Positions 4,093-22,368 of a DNA stretch of 37,468 bases are shown here, in pieces (positions within the stretch are counted from its first letter, which is position 1; each line of letters begins with the position of its first letter). Both the position numbers and the translations under genes were made by a program. Under the pieces are notes generated by a model that saw nothing but the letters and a program-made list of their open reading frames with translations, did no database searches and was not told the origin of the DNA. Location of the stretch: contig NC_068992.1 of the NCBI RefSeq assembly GCF_001194135.2, positions 4,132,046-4,169,513 of the forward strand, in the 5' to 3' direction. Source of the DNA: Octopus bimaculoides (Eukaryota).

Positions 4093-4537
4093 TTATTGTC
4101 TTTGCACAGCTTCTAACGCTGGAGATGTACTATGGTGTCAGCTGTCCACTACCAGTGAACTAAGGTAACACCCATTATTTTTCGAGTGCTGTTTTCTGCA
4201 AGTGCTCCACCCTTATTGCAGCCCCTATTTATTCCACGTAATTCTCGAGATTTTTGGTCAATGCTACCAGGGCTCCGACAATTATTGGTACTACTGCTAC
4301 CTATTTCATCAACCACAACTGCTTAACCTCCCAAGCTAATCTGTCATATCTCACGACTTCTCTTTCTTCCTTATCGCATACCTTGTTGTCAGCTGGGCAT
4401 GCTATATCTATGATCCAGCATCGTTTGCTTTCTTTCTCAATTAAGACTATGTCTGACTTCCTATTCTCTATCTCATAGTCACACTGAATCATAAAATCCC
4501 ACAGGTCCTTTGCATTATCATTTTCGATGATGCCTCC
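4043..4537 (-). mobile_element. 3' end of an RLE-type (R4/Dong-like) LINE: restriction-like endonuclease domain plus (AAT)n tail
   Basis: Minus translation: IIENDNAKDLWDFMIQCDYEIENRKSDIVLIEKESKRCWIIDIACPADNKVCDKEEREVVRYDRLAWEVKQLWLMK*VAVVPIIVGALVALTKNLENYVE*IGAAIRVEHLQKTAL. It carries the R(K)xD...DIA endonuclease motif and the typical VVPIIVGALG / LQKTAL C-terminus, and ends in (TTA)n at 4043-4093. Stops show it is dead. Confidence 0.88.
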
Positions 4538-4630
4538 GATAAATAAGTACCAGTTGCATACTGAGATCGATGTAATCAACTTACTCTTTCCTCCAAACTT
4601 GCTGGCCTTGTGCCAAAATTTGGAATCAAT
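4538..4630 (+). mobile_element. SINE family B 3' half
   Basis: gataaataagtaccagttg...gatcgatgtaatc...ggccttgtgccaaaatttgg; same family as 32037-32249 but in the opposite orientation. Confidence 0.7.
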
Positions 4631-4639
4631 ATTTCCTGT

Positions 4640-5440
4640 TATTTGTGTATATTTTCATTTGTCCATTTCATTAATTTCCAAGTATTTGTAAGTTTGTCTT
4701 TGGTCTATTTCTTTTTCTGTTTTATTTTCATTTATTTAAATAGCAATAATGGTCTTTAATAATAAGCTATCTCTTAAGGCTGTCTTGGAGTATTTTCTCT
4801 TTTTTTATGTAAATACCATACGATTTCCTCTGATCAATTTGCGTACTGCATGTCATAGACCTTTCAACTGTTAACCATTTGTAGCATATAAGCTGAGATC
4901 ATCCGTATATTAAAATTGGTTGACTGACCGCTCGTAACATTTCCATACCAATCTAGTCTGGTTTAAAATGTTAACCAACGGTGTTAACGTCAGCCAGAAA
5001 CAAAGTGAATAGAGAATGATATTTTGGAATATTCCTTAACTAACAGCGATCAGATTTATTTGTATAATTCCTTATCTTGTCTGTTTCTCTAGAATTGCAT
5101 GTCATTTACTCCTGGAATGTTTAATGTGCCTGTTTATTATGCTGATATCTTATTCAAATTTCCAGGATTTACATGTAAAGTAAACACTGTCAAAAACCTT
5201 CTGGTAATCAGTCGCCTCAATGCTTAAACCCGTTTGTCTCTTTTTGCCGTATTTAGTTAAAGCTTAGTTGATAAGTTATTGACCTAACTGCAAATAAGAA
5301 TTTTATTTTTTGTTTATTTTCAGATGTCCTCTGCGATACTGTTGCAGTTAATATTTTGCAAGCGTTACAAAAGCAGGCTAATGGTCTGTAGCTTCTAGGA
5401 CTTGTTAGTTCTTTAATCTTAGAGCTTAAGACGGTATTTC
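4640..5440 (-). mobile_element. Heavily decayed reverse transcriptase of an RLE-type LINE
   Basis: Collinear RT motifs on the minus strand: SYRPLACFCNACKILT (about 5346-5393), DYQKVFDSV (5183-5209), YTDDLSLY (YTDD at 4898-4909), KEIDQRQTYKYL (about 4680-4720). Frameshifts, stops and deletions lie between them. Confidence 0.8.
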
Positions 5441-5536: not shown

Positions 5537-5695
5537 GGCGTGGCTGTGTGGTAAGAAGCTTGCTTCCTAACTATGTAGTCTTCGGTTCAGTCACACTGCG
5601 CAAAACCTTTGAGCAAATATCCTCTACTATAACGCCGAATCGACTAAAACCTTGCAAGCAGATTAGGTGGACGGAAACTGAAAGAATTCCGTTGT
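5537..5695 (+). mobile_element. SINE family A (tRNA-like head plus core), followed by (TATG)n/(TATC)n/(TACA)n
   Basis: ggcgtggctgtgtggtaagaagcttgcttcc...ggttcagtc...gacggaaactgaaagaa. A-box-like and B-box-like segments are present, and paralogues occur at 7100, 10472 and 26820. Confidence 0.85.
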
Positions 5696-5835: not shown

Positions 5836-5957
5836 AGGTTGACTTTGTCTTTTAACCTTTCGGGATCGATAAAATAAGTACCACCTGAGCCCTGGGGTCA
5901 ATGTAATTGACTAGCCCCTCCCATCAAATTTCAGGTGTTGTGCCTATAGTAGAAAGG
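5836..5957 (+). mobile_element. SINE family B, 5'-truncated
   Basis: ttgactttgtcttttaacctttcgggatcgataaaataagtacc...tgtgcctatagtagaaagg. Confidence 0.8.
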
Positions 5958-6223: not shown

Positions 6224-6309
6224 CTTCTTCTTCTTCTTCTTCTTCTTCTTCTTCTTCTTCTTCTTCTTCTTCTTCTTCTTCTTCTTCTTCTTCTTCTTCT
6301 TCTTCTTCT
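6224..6309. repeat. (TTC)n microsatellite running into an N-gap
   Basis: Read directly from the sequence. Confidence 0.95.
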
Positions 6310-7099
6310 NNNNNNNNNNNNNNNNNNNNNNNNNNNNNNNNNNNNNNNNNNNNNNNNNNNNNNNNNNNNNNNNNNNNNNNNNNNNNNNNNNNNNNNNNNN
6401 NNNNNNNNNNNNNNNNNNNNNNNNNNNNNNNNNNNNNNNNNNNNNNNNNNNNNNNNNNNNNNNNNNNNNNNNNNNNNNNNNNNNNNNNNNNNNNNNNNNN
6501 NNNNNNNNNNNNNNNNNNNNNNNNNNNNNNNNNNNNNNNNNNNNNNNNNNNNNNNNNNNNNNNNNNNNNNNNNNNNNNNNNNNNNNNNNNNNNNNNNNNN
6601 NNNNNNNNNNNNNNNNNNNNNNNNNNNNNNNNNNNNNNNNNNNNNNNNNNACCACCATGCGACTGCCGTCCTCCTGGAGCACCACCGTGAATAGTCAAAA
6701 TATTTTTTCGTATACACCATGTGTTTATCTATTACGTTTTATCAAGTAAAGTTCCTTGGATTTTCTTTAACTCCCTCAAGTTTGGAACTTAATGATGAGC
6801 TAGAATTCTCATAGACTTATTTGTTATTAGTTCTTTATTATTAATGTGATGAGATAATTGATATCCAAGATTCAGCATCATGTAAAGCTACGTGTAAACG
6901 AATACTTGTAATCAACTTCACTTATCTTCAATTGTCACCTGCTTTCACCTCTGGTCGGTGAAGTGGCATGGCAATAATTAAGTATGGATGACAACAGGTA
7001 AACGAACGCATTTACAATGTACATCACCGACTATTATATAACATAAGAAAATTTAGTCCAAATTCATTCTATAGTAATATTTTCATTATATCTATACAG

Positions 7100-7235
7100 G
7101 CGTGGCTTCCCAACCACATGGTTCTGTGTTCCGTCCACTGCGTGGTACCTTGAGCAGGTGTCCTTTGCCATAACGTCGGGCCGACCAAAGCCTTGTGAGT
7201 GGATTTGGTAGACGGAAACTAAAAGAAAATCGACG
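7100..7235 (+). mobile_element. SINE family A with a deletion in the head
   Basis: ggcgtggcttcccaaccacatggttc...gggccgaccaaagccttgtgagtggatttggtagacggaaact. Confidence 0.85.
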
Positions 7236-7289
7236 GTAAATGTTGCAATTCTGTAAAAGAAAAAAACTACATCGTTAATGTCAGTAAGA

Positions 7290-8185
7290 TTAATGATGTG
7301 TGCTTTTATATTGTACACGTTCTTATATACTTAAGCGTAGAATAGCTTTGCTGCACTGTCTCGGAAAAGTACTTTGAATGTGCATGAAGATACACCAAGT
7401 TGGGCTATGAATAATATCATCGGACCGCATGAAACGTGTTTTTGCATCGTTGCGCCTTATCAACAAGACGCACAAAATCCATTTATCAAATCCTACTTTG
7501 AATTGCTCTTCTGAAATATAGATACTGAATAATAATTTTTCTGGCGTGTGCAAAGCGTAGTCAAGCTGGAATATATAAATTAAAGACGGTCTAAGTAGCA
7601 GTGATTAAAATAAAACTGTGTAGATTTATATTTAGCACGTTCGTGTGCCTTTCGACGAAGAAAAATCTTCACTGTGGTAGCTACCTCGGAAAAGAAGTTC
7701 TCACTCTAAACAATGTGTGTGAAAATACATTACTAGACTCTGAATGAAACCATAAGACTGTAGGACAAGTGATTTTGCGTCATTACGATCCATTAGCTAC
7801 AGACATATTGAATCTTGTCGTTTATAGCGCTCCAAGAACGGACGAGCTTATATAAAAAACATTAAATGAAAACTTTGTTGTCGTGTACATAGCTGTTTAT
7901 TTGGATTTAATTAAAAGCACATTGAGCTACGATAATTAAAATAGAGTTGTGTACATTTACATTTAACATGTCCGTGTACAATTTCAAGATCTTCTGTGCA
8001 GTAACTGTCTCGGAAGTGACACTCTCTTGTAAACAATGCGGGAAAACACACCGAGCTGGGTCACGAATGTCAATATGGTACTGCTGGATACTTGTTTTTA
8101 CCTCACTAACCTTCAACCCTTTAGTTTTGTTCTTGTTTTTAACTCACTTTCAGACATTGTGCTATGTTCACAAGAAATATAGTTA
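7290..8185. repeat. Cryptic diverged tandem repeat, three units of about 320-333 bp, origin unknown
   Basis: Anchors recur at regular spacing: tgtgt...ttta.att at 7297/7617/7948, ctcggaa at 7360/7685/8009, and an ungapped block at 7403/7736/8059. Hand counts: 36/52 identity for unit 1 vs 2 in that block; 26/33 for 7617 vs 7948. Confidence 0.8.
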
Positions 8186-8518
8186 TTCCTGCGATAAAAT
8201 TATCAAAAACAAGTTTTCTCAAATAGGTTTTTGCTGGTAGATCATTTTAAGTCAAACACACCCGTTATGTTGGCATCAAGTATTACGTCATTGTGCGTGT
8301 TTCGCTTTCAACTGAGAACAGAACAAGACGTCAAAAAAACGTTAACAAAATGAGAAACGAGAGCATAAACACAAAAACATAGAAAACGAACTTTGTTTTC
8401 GAACAACGAAAGAAACAAATACATATTTTTAATTAAATTAATGTTTATATATTAAATAGGGATATGGTTCACTCTGTATAACATGTATGGAGTTAGTCTA
8501 TTTACAAAGTACTAGAAA

Positions 8519-8626
8519 AAGTACTAGGCTTAAAAAATAAGTCCTATGGGCGATTTGCTCGACTAAAACCCTTCAAGGTGGTACTCCAGCATGGCTGTAG
8601 TCAACTGACTGAAACAAGTTGAAGAG
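8519..8626 (+). mobile_element. SINE family A 3' tail module
   Basis: aagtactaggctt...ataagtcc...cgatttgctcgactaaaacccttcaaggtggtactccagcatggctgtagtc...gactgaaacaag. Confidence 0.8.
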
Positions 8627-9451
8627 TAGAAGAATAAATTATTTACTTTTACATAGATGTGTGCGTGTGTGTGTATGTGTGTATTTTTCTTTCGTGGAAT
8701 TGTGGATCTCGAATCAAATAAAGGTAATTGCGGGTAAATATTGGACAGAAAAGCCTAATACTTCAACGCTGTTATTTTATTATTCATAGCTTTATTAGAT
8801 TCGCGTTTCAACGTCCCCAAAGTGAATTATTTCACATTCTCAAAGTTTCAAAATCGTTATGACGTCAGCATTTCATACAGGATGTGGAAAAAATTCGATA
8901 ACTGTCTACATGCGTGTTTGCATGCATGTATGCACAAATGCGTATAACTTACTGACTCCCTCCATAAGCATGCAATATTCTTCATATGTAGAGATGAATA
9001 CAGAGATCTACATCAGTTTTCGGGCCGTCGTTATCATTCTTACTATCTTCAGCAAATGTACGCCGCCATGCAATCATTTCGTTCAGCATCTTCCCGGCCG
9101 CCATCATCTTCAAAGATGGGAGATATGAATTTGAAATATATTCTGTTATTATTACATGCGGTTATGAATTCATATGCTTCGGATGTATATATTAATATAT
9201 TGCTATTTAATTACACACGCGGCCATAGCTGACTATTTGAGCATAGCTCCTATTTTTATATACTTTCAATGTAAATATGCATTAAATTACATGATATATT
9301 ACAGTTAAATATTCATTTCAATGCACAGTGTAAAACAACGTGAATTTCAATACATAGACGTCATTCTGCATGTATTCACACTGGCAAACACGTGCGCATG
9401 CGCACATATGCCCACACACTCACTCATATACACACATATAAATTTGTATAT

Positions 9452-9588
9452 TCTTTTATTTGTTTCAGTCATTTGACTGCGGCCACGCTGGAGCACCACC
9501 TTTAGTCGAACAAATCGACTCCAGGACTTATTCTTGCCCCTTCCCTCCAAGATTTCAGGCCTTGTGCCAAAATTTGAAACCAATATAT
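9452..9588. mobile_element. Composite: family A tail (minus) fused to family B tail (plus)
   Basis: ttgtttcagtcatttgactgcggccacgctggagcaccacc...ggacttattctt is followed directly by cccttccctccaagatttcaggccttgtgccaaaatttgaaacc. Confidence 0.75.
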
Positions 9589-10471
9589 TGTGTAGAGCAT
9601 GTTGGTTATATGAACACGATTCTCTTTCTCGCCACAGCATTTGAGCCTGTTCGATTTTCGGGTGTGACGTGTTTGCTATCTGTTTTTGTGTTGCTTTTAT
9701 ATTTATTGCAGTGCAGACCTTCCCTTATTTGAGGCTTCCGTTTCGAAAGGCTTGTTTCTAGTTTAGTTTTATTGGGATATTCCCAATCGTTGTCGTCACT
9801 TCTTTTGTTGTTCTATTCTCAAGTCTCTGAACGCGGAAAGCGCATATAACCGTTCAAAAGTTTATTACCGCTAACTGCGAAGAACAGGTTTACCAAGTTT
9901 CAGCCATTGGAGAGCGACCCTGTTCAGTCACCACAAATCAATCCGCGTACTTATACTTATATTTTTTTAATATAAACCTGGTCCTTATTCTNNNNNNNNN
10001 NNNNNNNNNNNNNNNNNNNNNNNNNNNNNNNNNNNNNNNNNNNNNNNNNNNNNNNNNNNNNNNNNNNNNNNNNNNNNNNNNNNNNNNNNNNNNNNNNNNN
10101 NNNNNNNNNNNNNNNNNNNNNNNNNNNNNNNNNNNNNNNNNNNNNNNNNNNNNNNNNNNNNNNNNNNNNNNNNNNNNNNNNNNNNNNNNNNNNNNNNNNN
10201 NNNNNNNNNNNNNNNNNNNNNNNNNNNNNNNNNNNNNNNNNNNNNNNNNNNNNNNNNNNNNNNNNNNNNNNNNNNNNNNNNNNNNNNNNNNNNNNNNNNN
10301 NNNNNNNNNNNNNNNNNNNNNNNNNNNNNNNNNNNNNNNNNNNNNNNNNNNNNNNNNNNNNNNNNNNNNNNNNNNNNNNNNNNNNNNNNNNNNNNNNNNN
10401 NNNNNNNNNNNNNNNNNNNNNNNNNNNNNNNNNNNNNNNNNNNNNNNNTATATATATATATATATATATAT

Positions 10472-10590
10472 GCGACAGGGTTCTTTCAATTTCCGTCTGT
10501 CGAATCCAGTCACAAGGTTTTGGAGGTCACTTGGCCACTTGCCCAATGTACCATCGAGTGGGATAGAACTCGGAAATATTTGGTTGGGGA
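10472..10590 (-). mobile_element. SINE family A
   Basis: ctttcaatttccgtctgtcgaatccagtcacaaggtttt...cacttgcccaatgtacc is the reverse complement of the 7100-7235 core. Confidence 0.75.
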
Positions 10591-10997
10591 GACAATCTTC
10601 AAATAGAATATTAAAATTAAAATTGCATTTTTCTGAAGTGTAATTAAATTGAGTGGTATTCACATAAACTTTCATCCTATAAATGATTAACATATTTAAA
10701 ACTGGCTATAATTGCCATATGTTAATTACATTTTTTGGATTTTAAAATTTTGTAATTTAAATGTAACAATTGCTTGTTTATATTAATTTGTTTTTTTGAA
10801 AGATTATTTTGATCAAAACTGATTAAATAAGCAACAATTATAATTGTTCAATCATCGAAATGCATTTGTCGTTAAACTAGGAAACGCCACTCTGCGATAA
10901 CCTACGATAACACATATTGTATATCTACTTCGCAAACATCTCTGTTTCTCTCATTACCCCCTCCCTTTCTCTCTGTACTAAATACACACACACACAC

Positions 10998-11353: not shown

Positions 11354-12424
11354 TGTCAAATATACTTAACTGTACCAACACATACACAGACACACACACT
11401 CACACACAAACATATATATGTATAGGTTTGGCTAAAAGTCCTCCGACAGTAACTCAAAATTCCATAAATACTAATTCATATTTTCACAACATAGAATATA
11501 ACTTCTGGTCTTGAAGTGGCTTTTTTCCTATCGCTGACCTTATCACTCCAGAACAGAATTAAAATTAGGGTTAACAAAAAGGTGATAATATATCAAAGTA
11601 CCTGGATAATAAATATTTCACATCCTGTCACAAGTACTACGGTGTAGCTATGACAACAACGACGCAGTTTTCTGGCTCATTGATACAGCAGTAAGTAGTT
11701 ACATTTGCTTGGCACTGCTCCCAACTAGATAAGGGTTCGCTTTATAATTAACGAATCAGTCAGCTTGCTCTATTGAGTGCAAGATTTCCTACAGAGATGC
11801 TCACTACAAGGCTTCGTTTCATCAATTTCATGCGAATTCCTACAATGCAAGTTTAATTATCTATGTAACCCCTGATATATTTTAGACTTGATCTAATGGG
11901 TTTGTATTATGTAGTACATTGTATTGTGTACCGCGTTGATAGATCGACGTGGCGGGTATTATATTTAAGAATAGGAGAACGTATGAAATAAACGAAAACT
12001 AGAAGTTTCTTTGACAGAGATTTCTTAAACCTCTCAGATGACACACAGTTGTAATTAACTCAAGAGAGTGAAGGTGAAAAAGTATAGGTTTAATACGAAG
12101 TGGTTTCTGTGAGAAAATACATTTAGCAATATATTATATATGTAACAATATACAGCATATTATATTACAATTTGCCACAGTATATATTCTCATATGCATT
12201 AAAATTTACGTAACAACACGTACTTACACACACAAACATATATACTTGTTATATAATGTGCATTAAAGTGCATGTTACATATAAAAGATTAATGTCAAAA
12301 TTAAAAGGAAAAGAAGAAACGGGAACGCAAGGGAAAAGCTTATTCTAGATTTAATTTATTCCAGAAACGATTTATGATAATAAGCGCACATACATAAATG
12401 GGTATGAATGTATTACTCTTTACT

Positions 12425-12474
12425 CTTTTATTCTTTTACTTGTTTCAGTCATTTGACTGCGGCCATGCTGGAGC
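12425..12474 (-). mobile_element. SINE family A tail fragment
   Basis: cttttacttgtttcagtcatttgactgcggccatgctggagca. Confidence 0.8.
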
Positions 12475-13095
12475 AACATCTTCAGCTCGGACGACGACTT
12501 CTTCACAATGGTCTCGCCTCATGGAGTGCTGCAAAGAAACCTTTTTTGTCCAAGAAAAACGTGAAGGACAGACTTGCCTTTTGCAGAAAATATAAAAATT
12601 GGTCTAGTGAAGTGATTTTTTTCTGAAGCACCATTTTAATTGTTTGGGACATCTGGAAAAAGTCTCGTCAGAAGGCGATAAGATGAACGCTATGATGAGG
12701 CCTGTACTGTGTCCACGGTCAAGTATCCAGAAACCATTCATGTGTGGGGTTGGTTTTCATCCAAGGGCGTTGAATCACTGTCAGTTTTGTCGAAAAGCAC
12801 ATCTATGAATTCCTCATGGTGCCAAAATGTTCTTGAAAACCATCTCCTTCCAACCGTTGAGAGGCATTTTGACAAAGGAACTTGCATTATCCAACAAGAT
12901 GGAGCACCTTGCCAACTGCTTAAAAGATTAAAAAGTATCTTGGAGATAAAGGTATTGAAATTTTGGAAACTTGGCCGGGAAATTCTCCAGATTTAAATCC
13001 TACTGGAAATTTGAGGTCTATCCTTAAAGTTCGAGTTGGCAGAAAAAAGACAACAAATACTGAAGAGTTGAAAGATCTTGCACAGCAAGAATGTC
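12475..13095 (+). pseudogene. Tc1-family (DD34E-type) transposase remnant without terminal inverted repeats (TIRs)
   Basis: Translated across frameshifts: RRLLHNGLASWSAAKKPFLSKKNVKDRLAFCRKYKNW...VIF...TVKYPETIHVWGWFSSKGV...IIQQDGAPC...WPGNSPDLNPTGNLRSILK. The first D is lost at a frameshift, the final E is replaced by G, and there are in-frame stops. Confidence 0.92.
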
Positions 13096-13096
13096 T

Positions 13097-13210
13097 GACT
13101 TAGCGGTTTGGCGAAGTAACCGATAGAGTGTCGATTCGTTCGACTAGAATACTTCAAGGTGCACCCTAGCATGGATGCAGTCCAATGACTGAAACTAGTA
13201 AAAGATAAAA
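13097..13210 (+). mobile_element. SINE family A tail module
   Basis: cttagcggtttggcgaag...ccgatagag...cttcaaggtgcaccctagcatggatgcagtccaatgactgaaactagtaaaag. Confidence 0.75.
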
Positions 13211-13325
13211 AAAAAAACATACAACCATTGACACATATATATATACATGTAATCACGCGTACATACATACACACATACATTCAATCATACATACAATCAT
13301 GCATACATACACACGTACATGCAAT

Positions 13326-18111: not shown

Positions 18112-18507
18112 TACAAGGGTGAGTCAAAAAGTAATGCCATTTTGTTTAGGATATGTATAATTACCAACACAAGAACATGTATCATACATCAAAATGAAGC
18201 TGGTCCTCTGTGGATCACATCCCTACTTCACAACATAGTCACCGTTTCTCTCAATAACAATGTACCACCTTCGAATGAGAGCATGTATCCCTGCCCCGTA
18301 AAATTCTGTTGACTGTTCGTTGAGCCACTTCTTCACTACAGTTTTCACTTCTTCGTCACTGGACTATCATCTCTTCGTCCCCATGAAAGAGGGTTTGAGA
18401 GGCAAACATTATTCCACAGAGGACCAGCTTCATTTTGATGTATGATACATGTTCTTGTGTTGGTAATTATACCTGCCCTAAACAAAATGGTCTTACTTTT
18501 TGACTCA
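18112..18507. mobile_element. Rearranged mariner derivative with 95-bp inverted arms, both derived from the 3' end
   Basis: TA followed by CAAGGGTGAGTCAAAAAGTAATGCC at the left end. 18120-18214 is the reverse complement of 18413-18507 (5 mismatches). The interior holds mariner C-terminal peptides in opposite orientations: minus SDEEVKTVVKKWLNEQSTEFYGAGIHALIRRWYIVIERNGDYVVK* and plus DYHLFVPMKEGLRGKHYS. Confidence 0.88.
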
Positions 18508-18854: not shown

Positions 18855-18981
18855 TTTCAAATTTTTAGGAGAGCGGAGTAAGCCGATTACATCGACCCCA
18901 ATGCTCGCCCAGCTCGTACTTATTTTATCGATCCCGAAAGGATGGAATACAAAATCAACCTCACTGGAACTTGAACTCAGT
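18855..18981 (-). mobile_element. SINE family B, cut by an N-gap
   Basis: cgattacatcgacccc...tacttattttatcgatcccgaaaggatg...ttgaactcag. Confidence 0.8.
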
Positions 18982-20226: not shown

Positions 20227-22368
20227 TTTCTTTATTGCCCACAGGGGGGCTAAGCACAGAGGGGACTAACAAAGGGATTAGGTCGATTATATCAACCTCA
20301 GTGCGTAACTGGTACTTCTTTAATCGCCCACCCCCCCCGAAAGGATGAAAGGCAAAGTGGACCTCGGCGGAATTTGAACTCAAAACGTAACGGCCGATTC
20401 GGCAACATTCGTTTATTTTCTAGAAAATGGGGTCATAACTCCGAAATATTGAATTGTAATGTAAGCGTACATTAATTTATATATTTGTTTTCTTGTGATT
20501 TACCTTGCGTTTTCTTCGCATTGTTTTGGCCTTACCCACGATCCTTTATACAAGATATATATANNNNNNNNNNNNNNNNNNNNNNNNNNNNNNNNNNNNN
20601 NNNNNNNNNNNNNNNNNNNNNNNNNNNNNNNNNNNNNNNNNNNNNNNNNNNNNNNNNNNNNNNNNNNNNNNNNNNNNNNNNNNNNNNNNNNNNNNNNNNN
20701 NNNNNNNNNNNNNNNNNNNNNNNNNNNNNNNNNNNNNNNNNNNNNNNNNNNNNNNNNNNNNNNNNNNNNNNNNNNNNNNNNNNNNNNNNNNNNNNNNNNN
20801 NNNNNNNNNNNNNNNNNNNNNNNNNNNNNNNNNNNNNNNNNNNNNNNNNNNNNNNNNNNNNNNNNNNNNNNNCTGAATGAACAGAAAGCAAATAGAAATA
20901 TATCCCTTTGATTTTGGCACAAGTTCACCAATTTTGGGGGTAGGGTCAAGTCGAGTACTTTGACTCCAGTGCTTACCTGGTGCTTATTTCATTGACCTTG
21001 TAAGGATGAAAAGCAAAGTTGACCTCAATGATATTTGAATTTAGAGCAATAAATAATAATAGTTTCAAGTTTTGGCACAAGGCTTGAAATTTCGCGGGAG
21101 GAAGATGAGTCAATTATATCGACCCCAGTATTCAAATGGTACTTATTTTATCGACCCTAAAAGGCTGAAAGGTAAAATCGACCTGGGCGGGATTTGAACT
21201 CAGAACGAAAGGCATTTTCTCTGGGGTGTTGACGATTCTGCCACCTCGCCGCCTTACAGAGAATAGTAATAATCCTTTCTTCTATAGGCACAAGGCCTGA
21301 ATCTTTATTCATTTATTTTTTTGGTTGGGGGGACTAATCGATTACATTGACTCAGCGTTTCACTGGTACTTAATTTATCGACCCTGAACGGATGAAAAGC
21401 AAAGTCGACCTCGGCAGAATTTGTTTAGTCCCAGGACAAACCTGTTCCAGAAAATCTATACCAAAACGTATTCCACTCATAACCATAGTGTCTTATTTAG
21501 ATGTATATGGCAATATCTACGCTGTCCTGTTATTTCTCTATGATGCAGTCTATGTACAGCGCTATATGTTGGACTACAACGTAGTTTGTGCTGCTAACTA
21601 CGTTGCTTCTGGGGACAGCGTGTTGCTATATTTTGTCTGCTTTTTTTTTGTTGTTGTTTTAATTTACTTTCAAATTTAAAAAAATTAAAGGTTAGAATCA
21701 TTATTGAATATCATATTTAATTATATTCAAAGTAAATTACTACCAAACTACTGCCAATTTTTGTTTTTTATGTGTGCTAGCTTGCCGGCACAGTAATAAT
21801 AATCCGTTTTTCTATAGCGGCGATTATCAACCAGGGTCCACATGACCCCTGCAGGGGGTCATAAAGACGGACTAAACGTTGCTGAGCATTTTGTCCGGCA
21901 TTCTAACGATTTTTGCCAACTCACCACCTTAAAAATAATCTTTTCTTATTTTGGCAGAAATGTAAAATTTTGTTACTAAAGTTTACGCGTAATAAATCGG
22001 TTCCACTTCAACAATTCTCAAAATGTCTTAACAATCTTTAATGCAATTCCTAATAACATTTATTTATAAACAAAAATAAGAGGATTTTTTAAGCATCGAA
22101 TGGCTGTGAGGGTCTACCTGAGTACAATAAGAATCAAAGAGGTTCAAAGGTAAAAAGTGATTAAAAAATACCGTTCTATCGGAATGAGGCTTGAAATTTT
22201 GGCGGAAGCGGGATAGTCGATTACATCGACCCCAGTACTTGACTGTTACTTAATTTATCGACACCGAAAGGATGAAAGGCAAAATCAACTTCTTCGGAAG
22301 TGTAAAAGCGGAAGGAAATATCGCTAAACCTTTTGTTCGACAAGCTAAAGATTCAGAGTACTCGACGC
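20227..22368 (-). mobile_element. Cluster of co-oriented SINE family B copies
   Basis: Copies at about 20227-20397 (alternative tail ttattgcccacaggggggctaagcacagagg), 20905-21046, 21062-21255, 21271-21423, 21864-21930 (head only) and 22180-22368. They share cgacccc.aaaggatgaaaggcaaagtcgacc and tttgaactca. Confidence 0.85.
21816..22173. mobile_element. Possible old hAT/MER-like non-autonomous DNA element interrupting a SINE tail
   Basis: The left end agcggcgattatcaaccagggtcc and right end aaaaagtgattaaaaaataccg resemble decayed CAGNGGTTCTCAACC-type termini (from recollection). It is flanked by a TTCTAT direct repeat (21810-15, 22174-79), and the SINE B tail resumes after it. Confidence 0.35.

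What the first reader, a model, noticed from the sequence alone, without database searches (positions are those of the whole stretch)
7290..8185. Hidden ~325-bp tandem triplication not explained by any recognisable element
Seen: three units with anchors at 7297/7617/7948, 7360/7685/8009 (spacing 325 and 324) and 7403/7736/8059. Hand counts: ungapped block 36/52 (unit 1 vs 2), 30/54 (2 vs 3) and 31/54 (1 vs 3); upstream block 26/33 (2 vs 3); tggcgtgtgcaaagc vs tgtcgtgtacatagc 12/15. Divergence of 20-45% makes it old, yet unit length is preserved with few indels. Units 1 and 2 share the minus-strand peptide RNDAK through three synonymous changes, but no frame stays open across units. Six mismatches in the 7617/7948 block fall in one phase, but both frames that make them third positions contain stops. 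Unit 3 has a CTCGG...CCGAG stem, partly kept in unit 1. Candidates (inference): relic satellite, cluster of structured ncRNAs, tandem regulatory modules, or duplicated micro-exon plus intron units. I found no hammerhead core in the units.
Basis: partly seen in the sequence, partly recalled or inferred. Interest (0 to 1): 0.7.

Follow-up and report, generated by a model that had tools for sequence, protein, structure and literature searches.

The report
Old decayed three-copy tandem repeat
Three head-to-tail copies of a non-coding stretch, spaced about 325 bp apart and now only about 66% alike, lie between two SINE-like insertions in repeat-rich DNA; the repeat is real, but it looks like an ordinary relic of a local duplication with no sign of a gene, RNA or other function.

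Summary
Three same-orientation cores (7284-7460, 7604-7792, 7935-8110) start 320 and 331 bp apart. They align far better than dinucleotide shuffles (z 11-20). A profile built from any two cores finds the third (E 1e-14 to 1e-19).

Nothing points to function:
- No reading frame is kept, gap lengths are not multiples of three, and mismatches show no codon phase.
- There is no Rfam family, tRNA or hammerhead core.
- Folding energies match shuffles on both strands, and the CTCGG/CCGAG stem exists only in unit 3.
- The two long ORFs have no Pfam family, and the one searched has no homologue.

Identity (66-67%) and indel density (1.7-3.4 events per 100 nt) match those of SINE-like copies in the same window, so the preserved unit length is what neutral decay gives.

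No other copy lies in the 37 kb. No animal genome could be searched, so I cannot say whether the unit belongs to a dispersed repeat family.

Best reading: an old local tandem duplication of 2.5-3 units decaying neutrally. Short arrays of 2-3 monomers are commonplace in the one mollusc genome surveyed. Interest is low.

The parts
7284..7460 (.). Core of unit 1 (about 175 nt of robust homology)
   Evidence: z 11.5 v core 2 and z 11.3 v core 3. Found by the HMM of copies 2+3 at E 1.3e-14, 7289-7453. 66-67% identity to the other cores.
7461..7603 (.). Spacer 1. The first ~65 nt are not alignable to spacer 2. The last ~80 nt are weakly alike in register.
   Evidence: Middle 7459-7524 v 7792-7854: z 0.03. 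Tail end 7525-7603 v 7855-7934: z 2.46, 33/2000 shuffles. 12/15 motif at 7542 and 7879.
7604..7792 (.). Core of unit 2
   Evidence: z 20.2 v core 3; nhmmer E 4.7e-52 against the three-core profile.
7793..7934 (.). Spacer 2
   Evidence: Same tests as spacer 1. It holds a weak echo of the unit start at 7861-7903 (60% to 7604-7646; core 2 v spacer 2 z 2.5).
7935..8110 (.). Core of unit 3, the last certain copy
   Evidence: The HMM from units 1+2 matches only model positions 2-184 here, at 7936-8108, E 1.8e-19.
8109..8321 (.). Sequence unique in the window, following core 3. It is either the end of the array or an insertion into unit 3. It begins with a 41-bp local duplication (8091-8107 / 8132-8148, 94%).
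   Evidence: No similarity to units 1 or 2 (z -0.2 and -1.1). No other copy in the window. The 17-nt direct repeat is family D12.
8322..8401 (.). Possible displaced spacer of unit 3 (weak)
   Evidence: 8353-8401 v 7834-7883: 72% over 50 columns, z 6.1, z 3.7 with a larger search space. 8322-8349 v 7462-7490: 77%, E 0.84. Not significant in a global alignment (z 1.4-1.7) and not found by two profile searches.
7078..7227 (+). Left boundary: copy of a dispersed SINE-like repeat (family A), 56 nt upstream of core 1
   Evidence: Three other copies in the window (5562-5686, 10481-10619 inverted, 26838-26960) at 66-72% by BLAST.
8515..8684 (+). Right boundary: copy of a second dispersed SINE-like repeat (family B) with a TG-rich tail
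   Evidence: At least six other copies in the window at 70-89%.

Best explanation
A stretch of about 325 bp of non-coding DNA was duplicated in tandem at this locus, by unequal crossing-over or replication slippage, to give 2.5-3 head-to-tail units. The copies have since drifted apart neutrally to about 66% identity. One segment was replaced in a spacer, and unit 3 either took an insertion or marks the end of the array. Dispersed SINE-like elements landed on either side. The array makes no product and has no detectable role.

Shown: the copies, their spacing, their divergence, and the absence of coding and RNA signals.
Inferred: the mechanism of origin, the neutrality, and that the unit is specific to this locus.
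For: - Same orientation and regular spacing of 320 and 331 bp, with z 11-20.
- Some in-register similarity also in the spacers that precede cores 2 and 3. This fits whole-unit duplication better than three separate insertions.
- No other copy in the remaining ~31 kb of the window, whereas the flanking SINE-like families have 3 to 6 or more extra copies there.
- The three pairs are equally diverged, K2P 0.45-0.49.
- Identity and indel density equal those of SINE-like copies in the same window.
- Invariant columns are scattered as chance predicts: the longest run is 7 nt, P 0.31.
- No coding signal (for the 97-aa ORF).
- No RNA family, tRNA, structure or hairpin excess.
- GC is 36%, like the window. 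CpG observed/expected is 1.12, within the window's range of up to 1.27.
- Base rate: in the oyster genome, arrays of 2-3 monomers of 100-500 bp are the commonest class, 8,224 of 14,591 arrays in 559 Mb (PMC7492417).
Against: - Divergence is uneven. The cores keep about 66% identity, while the ~65 nt after cores 1 and 2 are at random level although their lengths are similar, 66 and 63 nt. Uniform neutral decay alone does not predict this. It needs a replacement event, gene conversion limited to the cores, or constraint on the cores.
- No animal genome could be searched, so 'specific to this locus' rests only on one 37-kb window. That excludes only very abundant families.
- The alignment-fold energy is mildly better than column shuffles on both strands (z about -2).
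Confidence: 0.55

Rival explanations
1. The array is one short, old array of a dispersed repeat family. It could be a satDNA-like monomer carried inside a non-autonomous transposon, as in the Helentron/HINE or tandem-repeat MITE elements of molluscs, or a decayed satellite. On this reading the triplication was imported or expanded by the element rather than arising here. It would still be non-functional.
For: - Short arrays of 2-5 monomers inside mobile elements are abundant in bivalve genomes (PMC7492417; PMC3879986).
- The window is packed with transposon remains.
- The better survival of the cores compared with the spacers would fit modular elements.
Against: - No second copy in the window.
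- No microsatellite next to the array. The nearest are (CTT)n at 6224-6309, about 1 kb upstream, and a (TG)n run at 8658-8682 that lies inside SINE-like family B.
- No convincing terminal inverted repeats around the array. The best pair is 22 nt at 77% (I2).
- The 325-bp unit is outside the 140-180 bp typical of those elements.
- A degenerate-pattern scan of metagenome contigs gave only two matches confined to the pattern itself.
Confidence: 0.3
2. The ~175-nt cores are functional non-coding modules. They could be tandem cis-regulatory units, or units of an unstructured transcript such as a long non-coding RNA or a small-RNA source. Selection or gene conversion keeps them alike while the spacers drift.
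For: - Cores are alignable, but the adjacent ~65 nt of spacer is not, and spacer length is kept.
- CpG observed/expected in the array (1.12) is above the window median of 0.835.
Against: - The cores are as diverged and as gapped as SINE-like copies in the same window.
- There are no conserved blocks beyond chance.
- There is no structure or covariation signal.
- One replacement event in one spacer explains the unevenness.
- CpG observed/expected is within the window's normal range.
Confidence: 0.07
3. The units are tandemly duplicated exons with short introns (mutually exclusive or micro-exons).
For: - RNDAK is kept through three synonymous changes in units 1 and 2.
- One block has mismatches concentrated in one phase, p 0.039.
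- A 97-aa ORF spans core 3.
Against: - Stops occur in every frame of at least one unit.
- Gap lengths are not multiples of three.
- Six of seven blocks show no phase bias.
- In unit 3 the RNDAK position reads LVR*K on my reading of the sequence.
- The 97-aa ORF has no homologue among 5.8 billion proteins, and neither ORF has a Pfam family.
- ORFs of this length are expected by chance in 64% A+T sequence (my own estimate).
Confidence: 0.01
4. The units are a ribozyme-bearing tandem retroelement (animal retrozyme), or a decayed small-RNA gene array such as 5S rDNA.
For: - The unit length falls in the ~170-400 nt range of animal retrozyme RNAs (PMC7229834).
- The invariant TCTCGGAA resembles a stretch of 5S rRNA.
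- A T-run lies near the end of each core.
Against: - No hammerhead or any other Rfam family at E<=10.
- No CUGANGA...GAAA core within 7284-8110 on either strand.
- Alignment to a 5S rRNA sequence written from memory is at shuffle level, z -0.7 to 1.0.
Confidence: 0.01

Closest known systems
Short satDNA-like tandem arrays scattered through mollusc genomes (Crassostrea gigas survey, PMC7492417)
   Same: Head-to-tail monomers of 100-500 bp. Two to three monomers per array is the commonest class. The arrays lie in transposon-rich euchromatin, are non-coding, and many are too divergent to cluster with anything.
   Different: The monomer here is about 325 bp rather than 140-180 bp. The copies are about 66% alike, below what TRF detects. 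None of the flank modules of the oyster elements was seen, and family membership could not be tested.
Tandem-repeat-containing MITEs and non-autonomous Helentrons (DTC84, pearl, Cg_HINE; PMC3879986, PMC7492417)
   Same: A central block of up to about five repeats, with variable junction sequence between the repeats and the flanks.
   Different: Those elements have a microsatellite at one end of the array, sub-terminal inverted repeats and a 3' palindrome. Here both sides are occupied by SINE-like insertions, and no such modules are evident.
Animal retrozymes: tandem units each carrying a type I hammerhead, expressed as ~170-400 nt RNAs (PMC7229834)
   Same: The unit length and the tandem head-to-tail layout in an invertebrate-like genome.
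   Different: There is no hammerhead in any unit.
Monomer arrays in the 5' UTR of LINE elements (e.g. mouse L1; from my own knowledge)
   Same: Tandem units a few hundred bp long, upstream (on the minus strand) of a reverse-transcriptase remnant in this window.
   Different: The reverse-transcriptase remnant spans only 4184-5281 and is truncated and internally deleted. More than 2 kb of other repeats, microsatellites and an assembly gap separate it from the array.

Membership tests
Tandem repeat / satDNA-like short array | Two or more head-to-tail copies in one orientation with a regular period | tested here: met
   Core starts are 320 and 331 bp apart, all on the same strand.
Tandem repeat / satDNA-like short array | Similarity between monomers beyond chance | tested here: met
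   z 11-20 against dinucleotide shuffles. Leave-one-out HMMs give E 1e-14 to 1e-19.
Satellite DNA in the classical sense | Abundant family with many or long arrays in the genome | not testable with these tools
   No animal genome collection is available. No other copy in this 37-kb window. The metagenome scan gave only chance matches.
Helentron/HINE or tandem-repeat MITE central repeats | Left flank with sub-terminal inverted repeat, its complement and a microsatellite; right flank with sub-terminal inverted repeat and a palindrome (PMC7492417) | tested here: inconclusive
   No microsatellite adjoins the array. The best inverted pair around it is 22 nt at 77%. Both flanks are overwritten by SINE-like copies, so decayed modules cannot be excluded.
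Animal retrozyme | A type I hammerhead ribozyme in each unit | tested here: not met
   No Rfam hammerhead at E<=10 in 6700-8900. No CUGANGA...GAAA core inside 7284-8110.
Cluster of structured ncRNA genes (snoRNA, snRNA, miRNA, tRNA, 5S and others) | Match to a known family, or a stable and conserved secondary structure | tested here: not met
   Rfam found nothing and no tRNA was found. Folding z runs from -0.34 to +1.36. The structure conservation index is 0.32 and 0.25. The best 80-nt hairpin is -20 kcal/mol, in unit 1 only, and the background 5th percentile is -20.8. Comparison with 5S rRNA gives z <= 1.
Tandemly duplicated (mutually exclusive) exons | A frame open across each copy, indels in multiples of three, and mismatches biased to third codon positions | tested here: not met
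   Stops in every frame of at least one unit. Gap lengths of 1, 4, 10, 2, 8 and so on. Phase test non-significant in 6 of 7 blocks. No Pfam family for either ORF and no homologue of the 97-aa ORF.
LINE 5'-UTR monomer array | The array is contiguous with the 5' end of the element's reading frames | tested here: not met
   tblastn with six full-length relatives maps only protein positions ~444-655 and ~914-1035, to 5281-4184 on the minus strand. Nothing was detected between 5281 and the array.

The most novel reading that the evidence does not exclude
The three ~175-nt cores are kept alike by selection or by gene conversion, because they act as repeated non-coding modules (tandem cis-regulatory units, or units of an unstructured or small-RNA-producing transcript). 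The duplication would then be much older than the cores' 66% identity suggests, and the unalignable but length-matched spacer segments would be the true neutral read-out.
Probability: 0.06. Interest if true: 0.45.

Novelty: new member of a known kind. Interest (0 to 1): 0.1.

Why it matters
It matters little for biology. It is one more short, degenerate tandem array in transposon-rich non-coding DNA.

Its practical value is for annotation. Arrays at about 66% identity fall below Tandem Repeats Finder's reach and are left unmasked. Profile-based self-comparison recovers them.

It also shows a cheap control. Comparing a suspicious repeat with interspersed repeat copies in the same window tells whether its preserved length is more than neutral decay would give.

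Tried and rejected
1. 5S rDNA relic. The lead was the invariant TCTCGGAA and a T-run near each core end. Alignment of each unit and of their consensus to a 5S rRNA sequence written from memory is at shuffle level, and Rfam is silent.
2. Hammerhead or retrozyme: no core motif in the array.
3. miRNA-like hairpins: none conserved, and mean 80-nt folding energy equals the background.
4. Coding exons: frames, gap lengths and phase all fail. The ORFs have no Pfam family. The 97-aa ORF has no homologue. Neither ORF is on record by exact look-up.
5. LINE 5' monomers: the reverse-transcriptase remnant ends near 5281. Pfam on translated flanks found nothing.
6. Half-unit sub-period (a dimer of ~165 bp): cores v spacers show no consistent similarity.
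7. A fourth unit at 8353-8515, and a unit 0 upstream. For the fourth unit there are collinear short motifs (read by eye in the sequence) but no profile hit. For unit 0 the best count is 24/53 at offset 315, which is marginal after scanning 45 offsets.
8. Relatives elsewhere: a degenerate 26-nt pattern that matches all three units found two metagenome contigs. Both match only around the pattern, as expected by chance.
9. Literature on octopus or cephalopod satellites: nothing specific turned up.
10. Identifying the organism: cluster look-up of the closest reverse-transcriptase fragments gave no names. It was not tested.

Full report
**Context**

The window is a draft eukaryotic sequence with 14 runs of N and 36% G+C. 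It is dense with microsatellites. It carries:
- a Tc1/mariner transposase fragment (HTH_Tnp_Tc3_2, E 1.6e-10);
- a truncated reverse-transcriptase remnant at 4184-5281 on the minus strand;
- at least three families of short dispersed repeats.

The SINE-like sequences look octopus-like to me from memory. No tool result establishes the organism.

**Is the repeat real?**

Yes. Local alignments of the three proposed units beat 500 dinucleotide-preserving shuffles: z 11.5 (1 v 2), z 20.2 (2 v 3) and z 11.3 (1 v 3). No shuffle reached the observed score.

In an ungapped diagonal scan of 6651-9991, the four best offsets are 331, 656, 333 and 320, all inside 7278-7705. A profile built from units 1 and 2 alone finds unit 3 at E 1.8e-19. 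A profile from copies 2 and 3 finds core 1 at E 1.3e-14.

Every hand count in the finding is exact: 36/52, 30/54, 31/54, 26/33, 12/15 and the two RNDAK codings. Tandem Repeats Finder does not report the array even at minimum score 30.

**Anatomy**

Robust homology is confined to three cores of about 175 nt: 7284-7460, 7604-7792 and 7935-8110.
- Identity without gaps is 64-67% and K2P distance is 0.45-0.49. The three pairs are about equally distant.
- Between the cores lie spacers of about 145 nt.
- The last ~80 nt of spacers 1 and 2 are weakly alike in register (z 2.46, 33 of 2000 shuffles).
- The first ~65 nt of the spacers are at random level (z 0.03), although they have similar lengths of 66 and 63 nt.

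After core 3 comes 8109-8321. It matches nothing else in the window and opens with a 41-bp local duplication (D12).

A stretch at 8353-8401 resembles 7834-7883 (72%; z 6.1 and 3.7 depending on the search space). It may be the displaced spacer of unit 3. It fails a global test and two profile searches. I treat it as possible only.

The array is bounded by two dispersed SINE-like copies:
- 7078-7227, with three other copies in the window;
- 8515-8684, with six or more other copies.

There is no second copy of the unit in the other ~31 kb.

**Is it coding?**

No.
- Each of the six frames has stops in at least one unit.
- Gap lengths between cores are 1, 4, 10, 2, 2 / 1, 8, 1 / 3, 1, 1, 3, 3.
- Mismatch phase is flat in six of seven ungapped blocks.
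- The 97-aa ORF across core 3 has no relative among 5.8 billion proteins.
- Neither it nor the 76-aa minus-strand ORF of unit 1 has a Pfam family or is on record as a called gene.

**Is it a structured RNA?**

No evidence.
- Rfam gives nothing at gathering thresholds for the window.
- At E<=10 for 6700-8900 it gives only a sub-threshold chance match outside the array.
- ARAGORN finds no tRNA.
- Minimum free energies of the cores on both strands lie within -0.34 to +1.36 sd of shuffles.
- Consensus folds are weak, with many broken pairs. The structure conservation index is 0.32 on the plus strand and 0.25 on the minus strand. The advantage over column shuffles is mild and equal on both strands, z about -2.
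- An 80-nt hairpin scan gives a mean energy equal to the background. Its best hairpin is -20 kcal/mol, in unit 1 only, and the background 5th percentile is -20.8.
- CCGAG, the partner of the invariant CTCGG, occurs only in unit 3.
- There is no hammerhead core in the array.
- A resemblance of TCTCGGAA plus a downstream T-run to 5S rRNA did not survive a direct test.

**Is the preserved length remarkable?**

No. I used interspersed SINE-like copies in the same window as a neutral yardstick, with the same aligner. Family A copies are 68-75% identical in their full-length alignments, with 1.6-3.6 gap events per 100 aligned nt. The cores are 66-67% identical with 1.7-3.4.

Invariant columns (73 of 158) are scattered as chance predicts. 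The longest run is 7 nt, P 0.31.

G+C equals the window's. CpG observed/expected is 1.12, high but within the window's range.

**Is it part of a larger element?**

The reverse-transcriptase remnant lies upstream of the array's minus-strand 3' side. Six full-length relatives match it only over protein positions ~444-655 and ~914-1035, at 5281-4184. More than 2 kb of other repeats, microsatellites and an N-gap separate it from the array. The array is therefore not a LINE 5' monomer block.

The modules that define mollusc tandem-repeat transposons are a microsatellite at the array edge, sub-terminal inverted repeats and a 3' palindrome (PMC7492417; PMC3879986). None is evident here. The SINE-like insertions could have overwritten them.

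No animal genome could be searched. A degenerate pattern scan of metagenome contigs returned two matches limited to the pattern itself, about what chance predicts.

**Interpretation**

The simplest account is a local tandem duplication of a ~325-bp non-coding unit to 2.5-3 copies, followed by neutral decay. It needs one segmental replacement in a spacer, and either an insertion in unit 3 or the array's end there. The near-equal pairwise distances suggest that the copies arose close together in time.

With K of about 0.47 between copies, the age would be tens of millions of years to about 100 million years under assumed neutral rates of 1e-8 to 2e-9 per site per year. That is an assumption, not a result.

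The one feature this does not predict is that the cores are alignable while an adjacent, length-matched 65 nt is not. A replacement event explains it most cheaply. Gene conversion or constraint on the cores remains possible at low probability.

The main open alternative is that the unit belongs to a dispersed, transposon-borne or satellite family. That would be equally ordinary.

In the one mollusc genome surveyed for this, arrays of two or three monomers of 100-500 bp are the commonest class: 8,224 of 14,591 arrays in 559 Mb, roughly one array of any size per 38 kb. Another 4,689 arrays cluster with nothing (PMC7492417).

**Verdict**

It is a new member of a known kind, and interest is low.

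Noticed in passing
window 18120-18214 and 18413-18507: A 95-nt inverted repeat, 95% complementary, with 198 nt between the arms. It looks like a young foldback or MITE-like element of about 390 bp, and is far better preserved than the other repeats in the window.
   Followed up: partly
window 4184-5281 (minus strand): Remnant of a reverse-transcriptase element. It matches relatives of 1,050-1,300 aa only at protein positions ~444-655 and ~914-1035, so it is 5'-truncated and has an internal deletion of about 260 aa. Pfam does not recognise it.
   Followed up: yes
window 12408-12996 (plus strand) and 31062-31474 (minus strand): Transposase fragments. ORF 12408-12623 matches the Tc1/mariner HTH_Tnp_Tc3_2 domain (E 1.6e-10). 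The ORFs at 31062-31474 look transposase-like by eye but have no Pfam match.
   Followed up: partly
window 7078-7227, 5562-5686, 10481-10619, 26838-26960: SINE-like family A: four copies at 66-75% identity, one of them inverted.
   Followed up: partly
window 8515-8684, 9398-9535, 12380-12482, 13132-13217, 24048-24186, 26661-26789, 33622-33672: SINE-like family B, with a TG/CA-rich tail: seven or more copies at 70-91% identity in both orientations.
   Followed up: partly
window 5836-5957, 18856-18980, 20282-20397, 21063-21214, 21223-21423, 22187-22299, 31989-32193: A third dispersed repeat family, with copies of about 100-200 nt at 73-82% identity.
   Followed up: no
window 8091-8107 and 8132-8148: A 17-nt direct repeat (16/17) spaced 41 bp apart, marking a small local tandem duplication exactly where homology of unit 3 to the other units ends.
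   Followed up: partly
window 8652-8731 (minus strand): Sub-threshold Rfam match to EBv-sisRNA-1 (23 bits against a gathering score of 58, E 0.013). It rests largely on a CA-rich low-complexity stretch and I read it as chance.
   Followed up: no
window 7415-7499 (minus strand): The most stable 80-nt hairpin in the array region, -20 kcal/mol with 27 pairs, at the junction of core 1 and spacer 1. It does not recur in units 2 or 3 and lies near the background 5th percentile.
   Followed up: partly
whole window: There are 14 runs of N (10-798 bases, 5,391 in all), many of them next to microsatellites. Distances across them, including 6310-6650 just upstream of the array, are not reliable.
   Followed up: no
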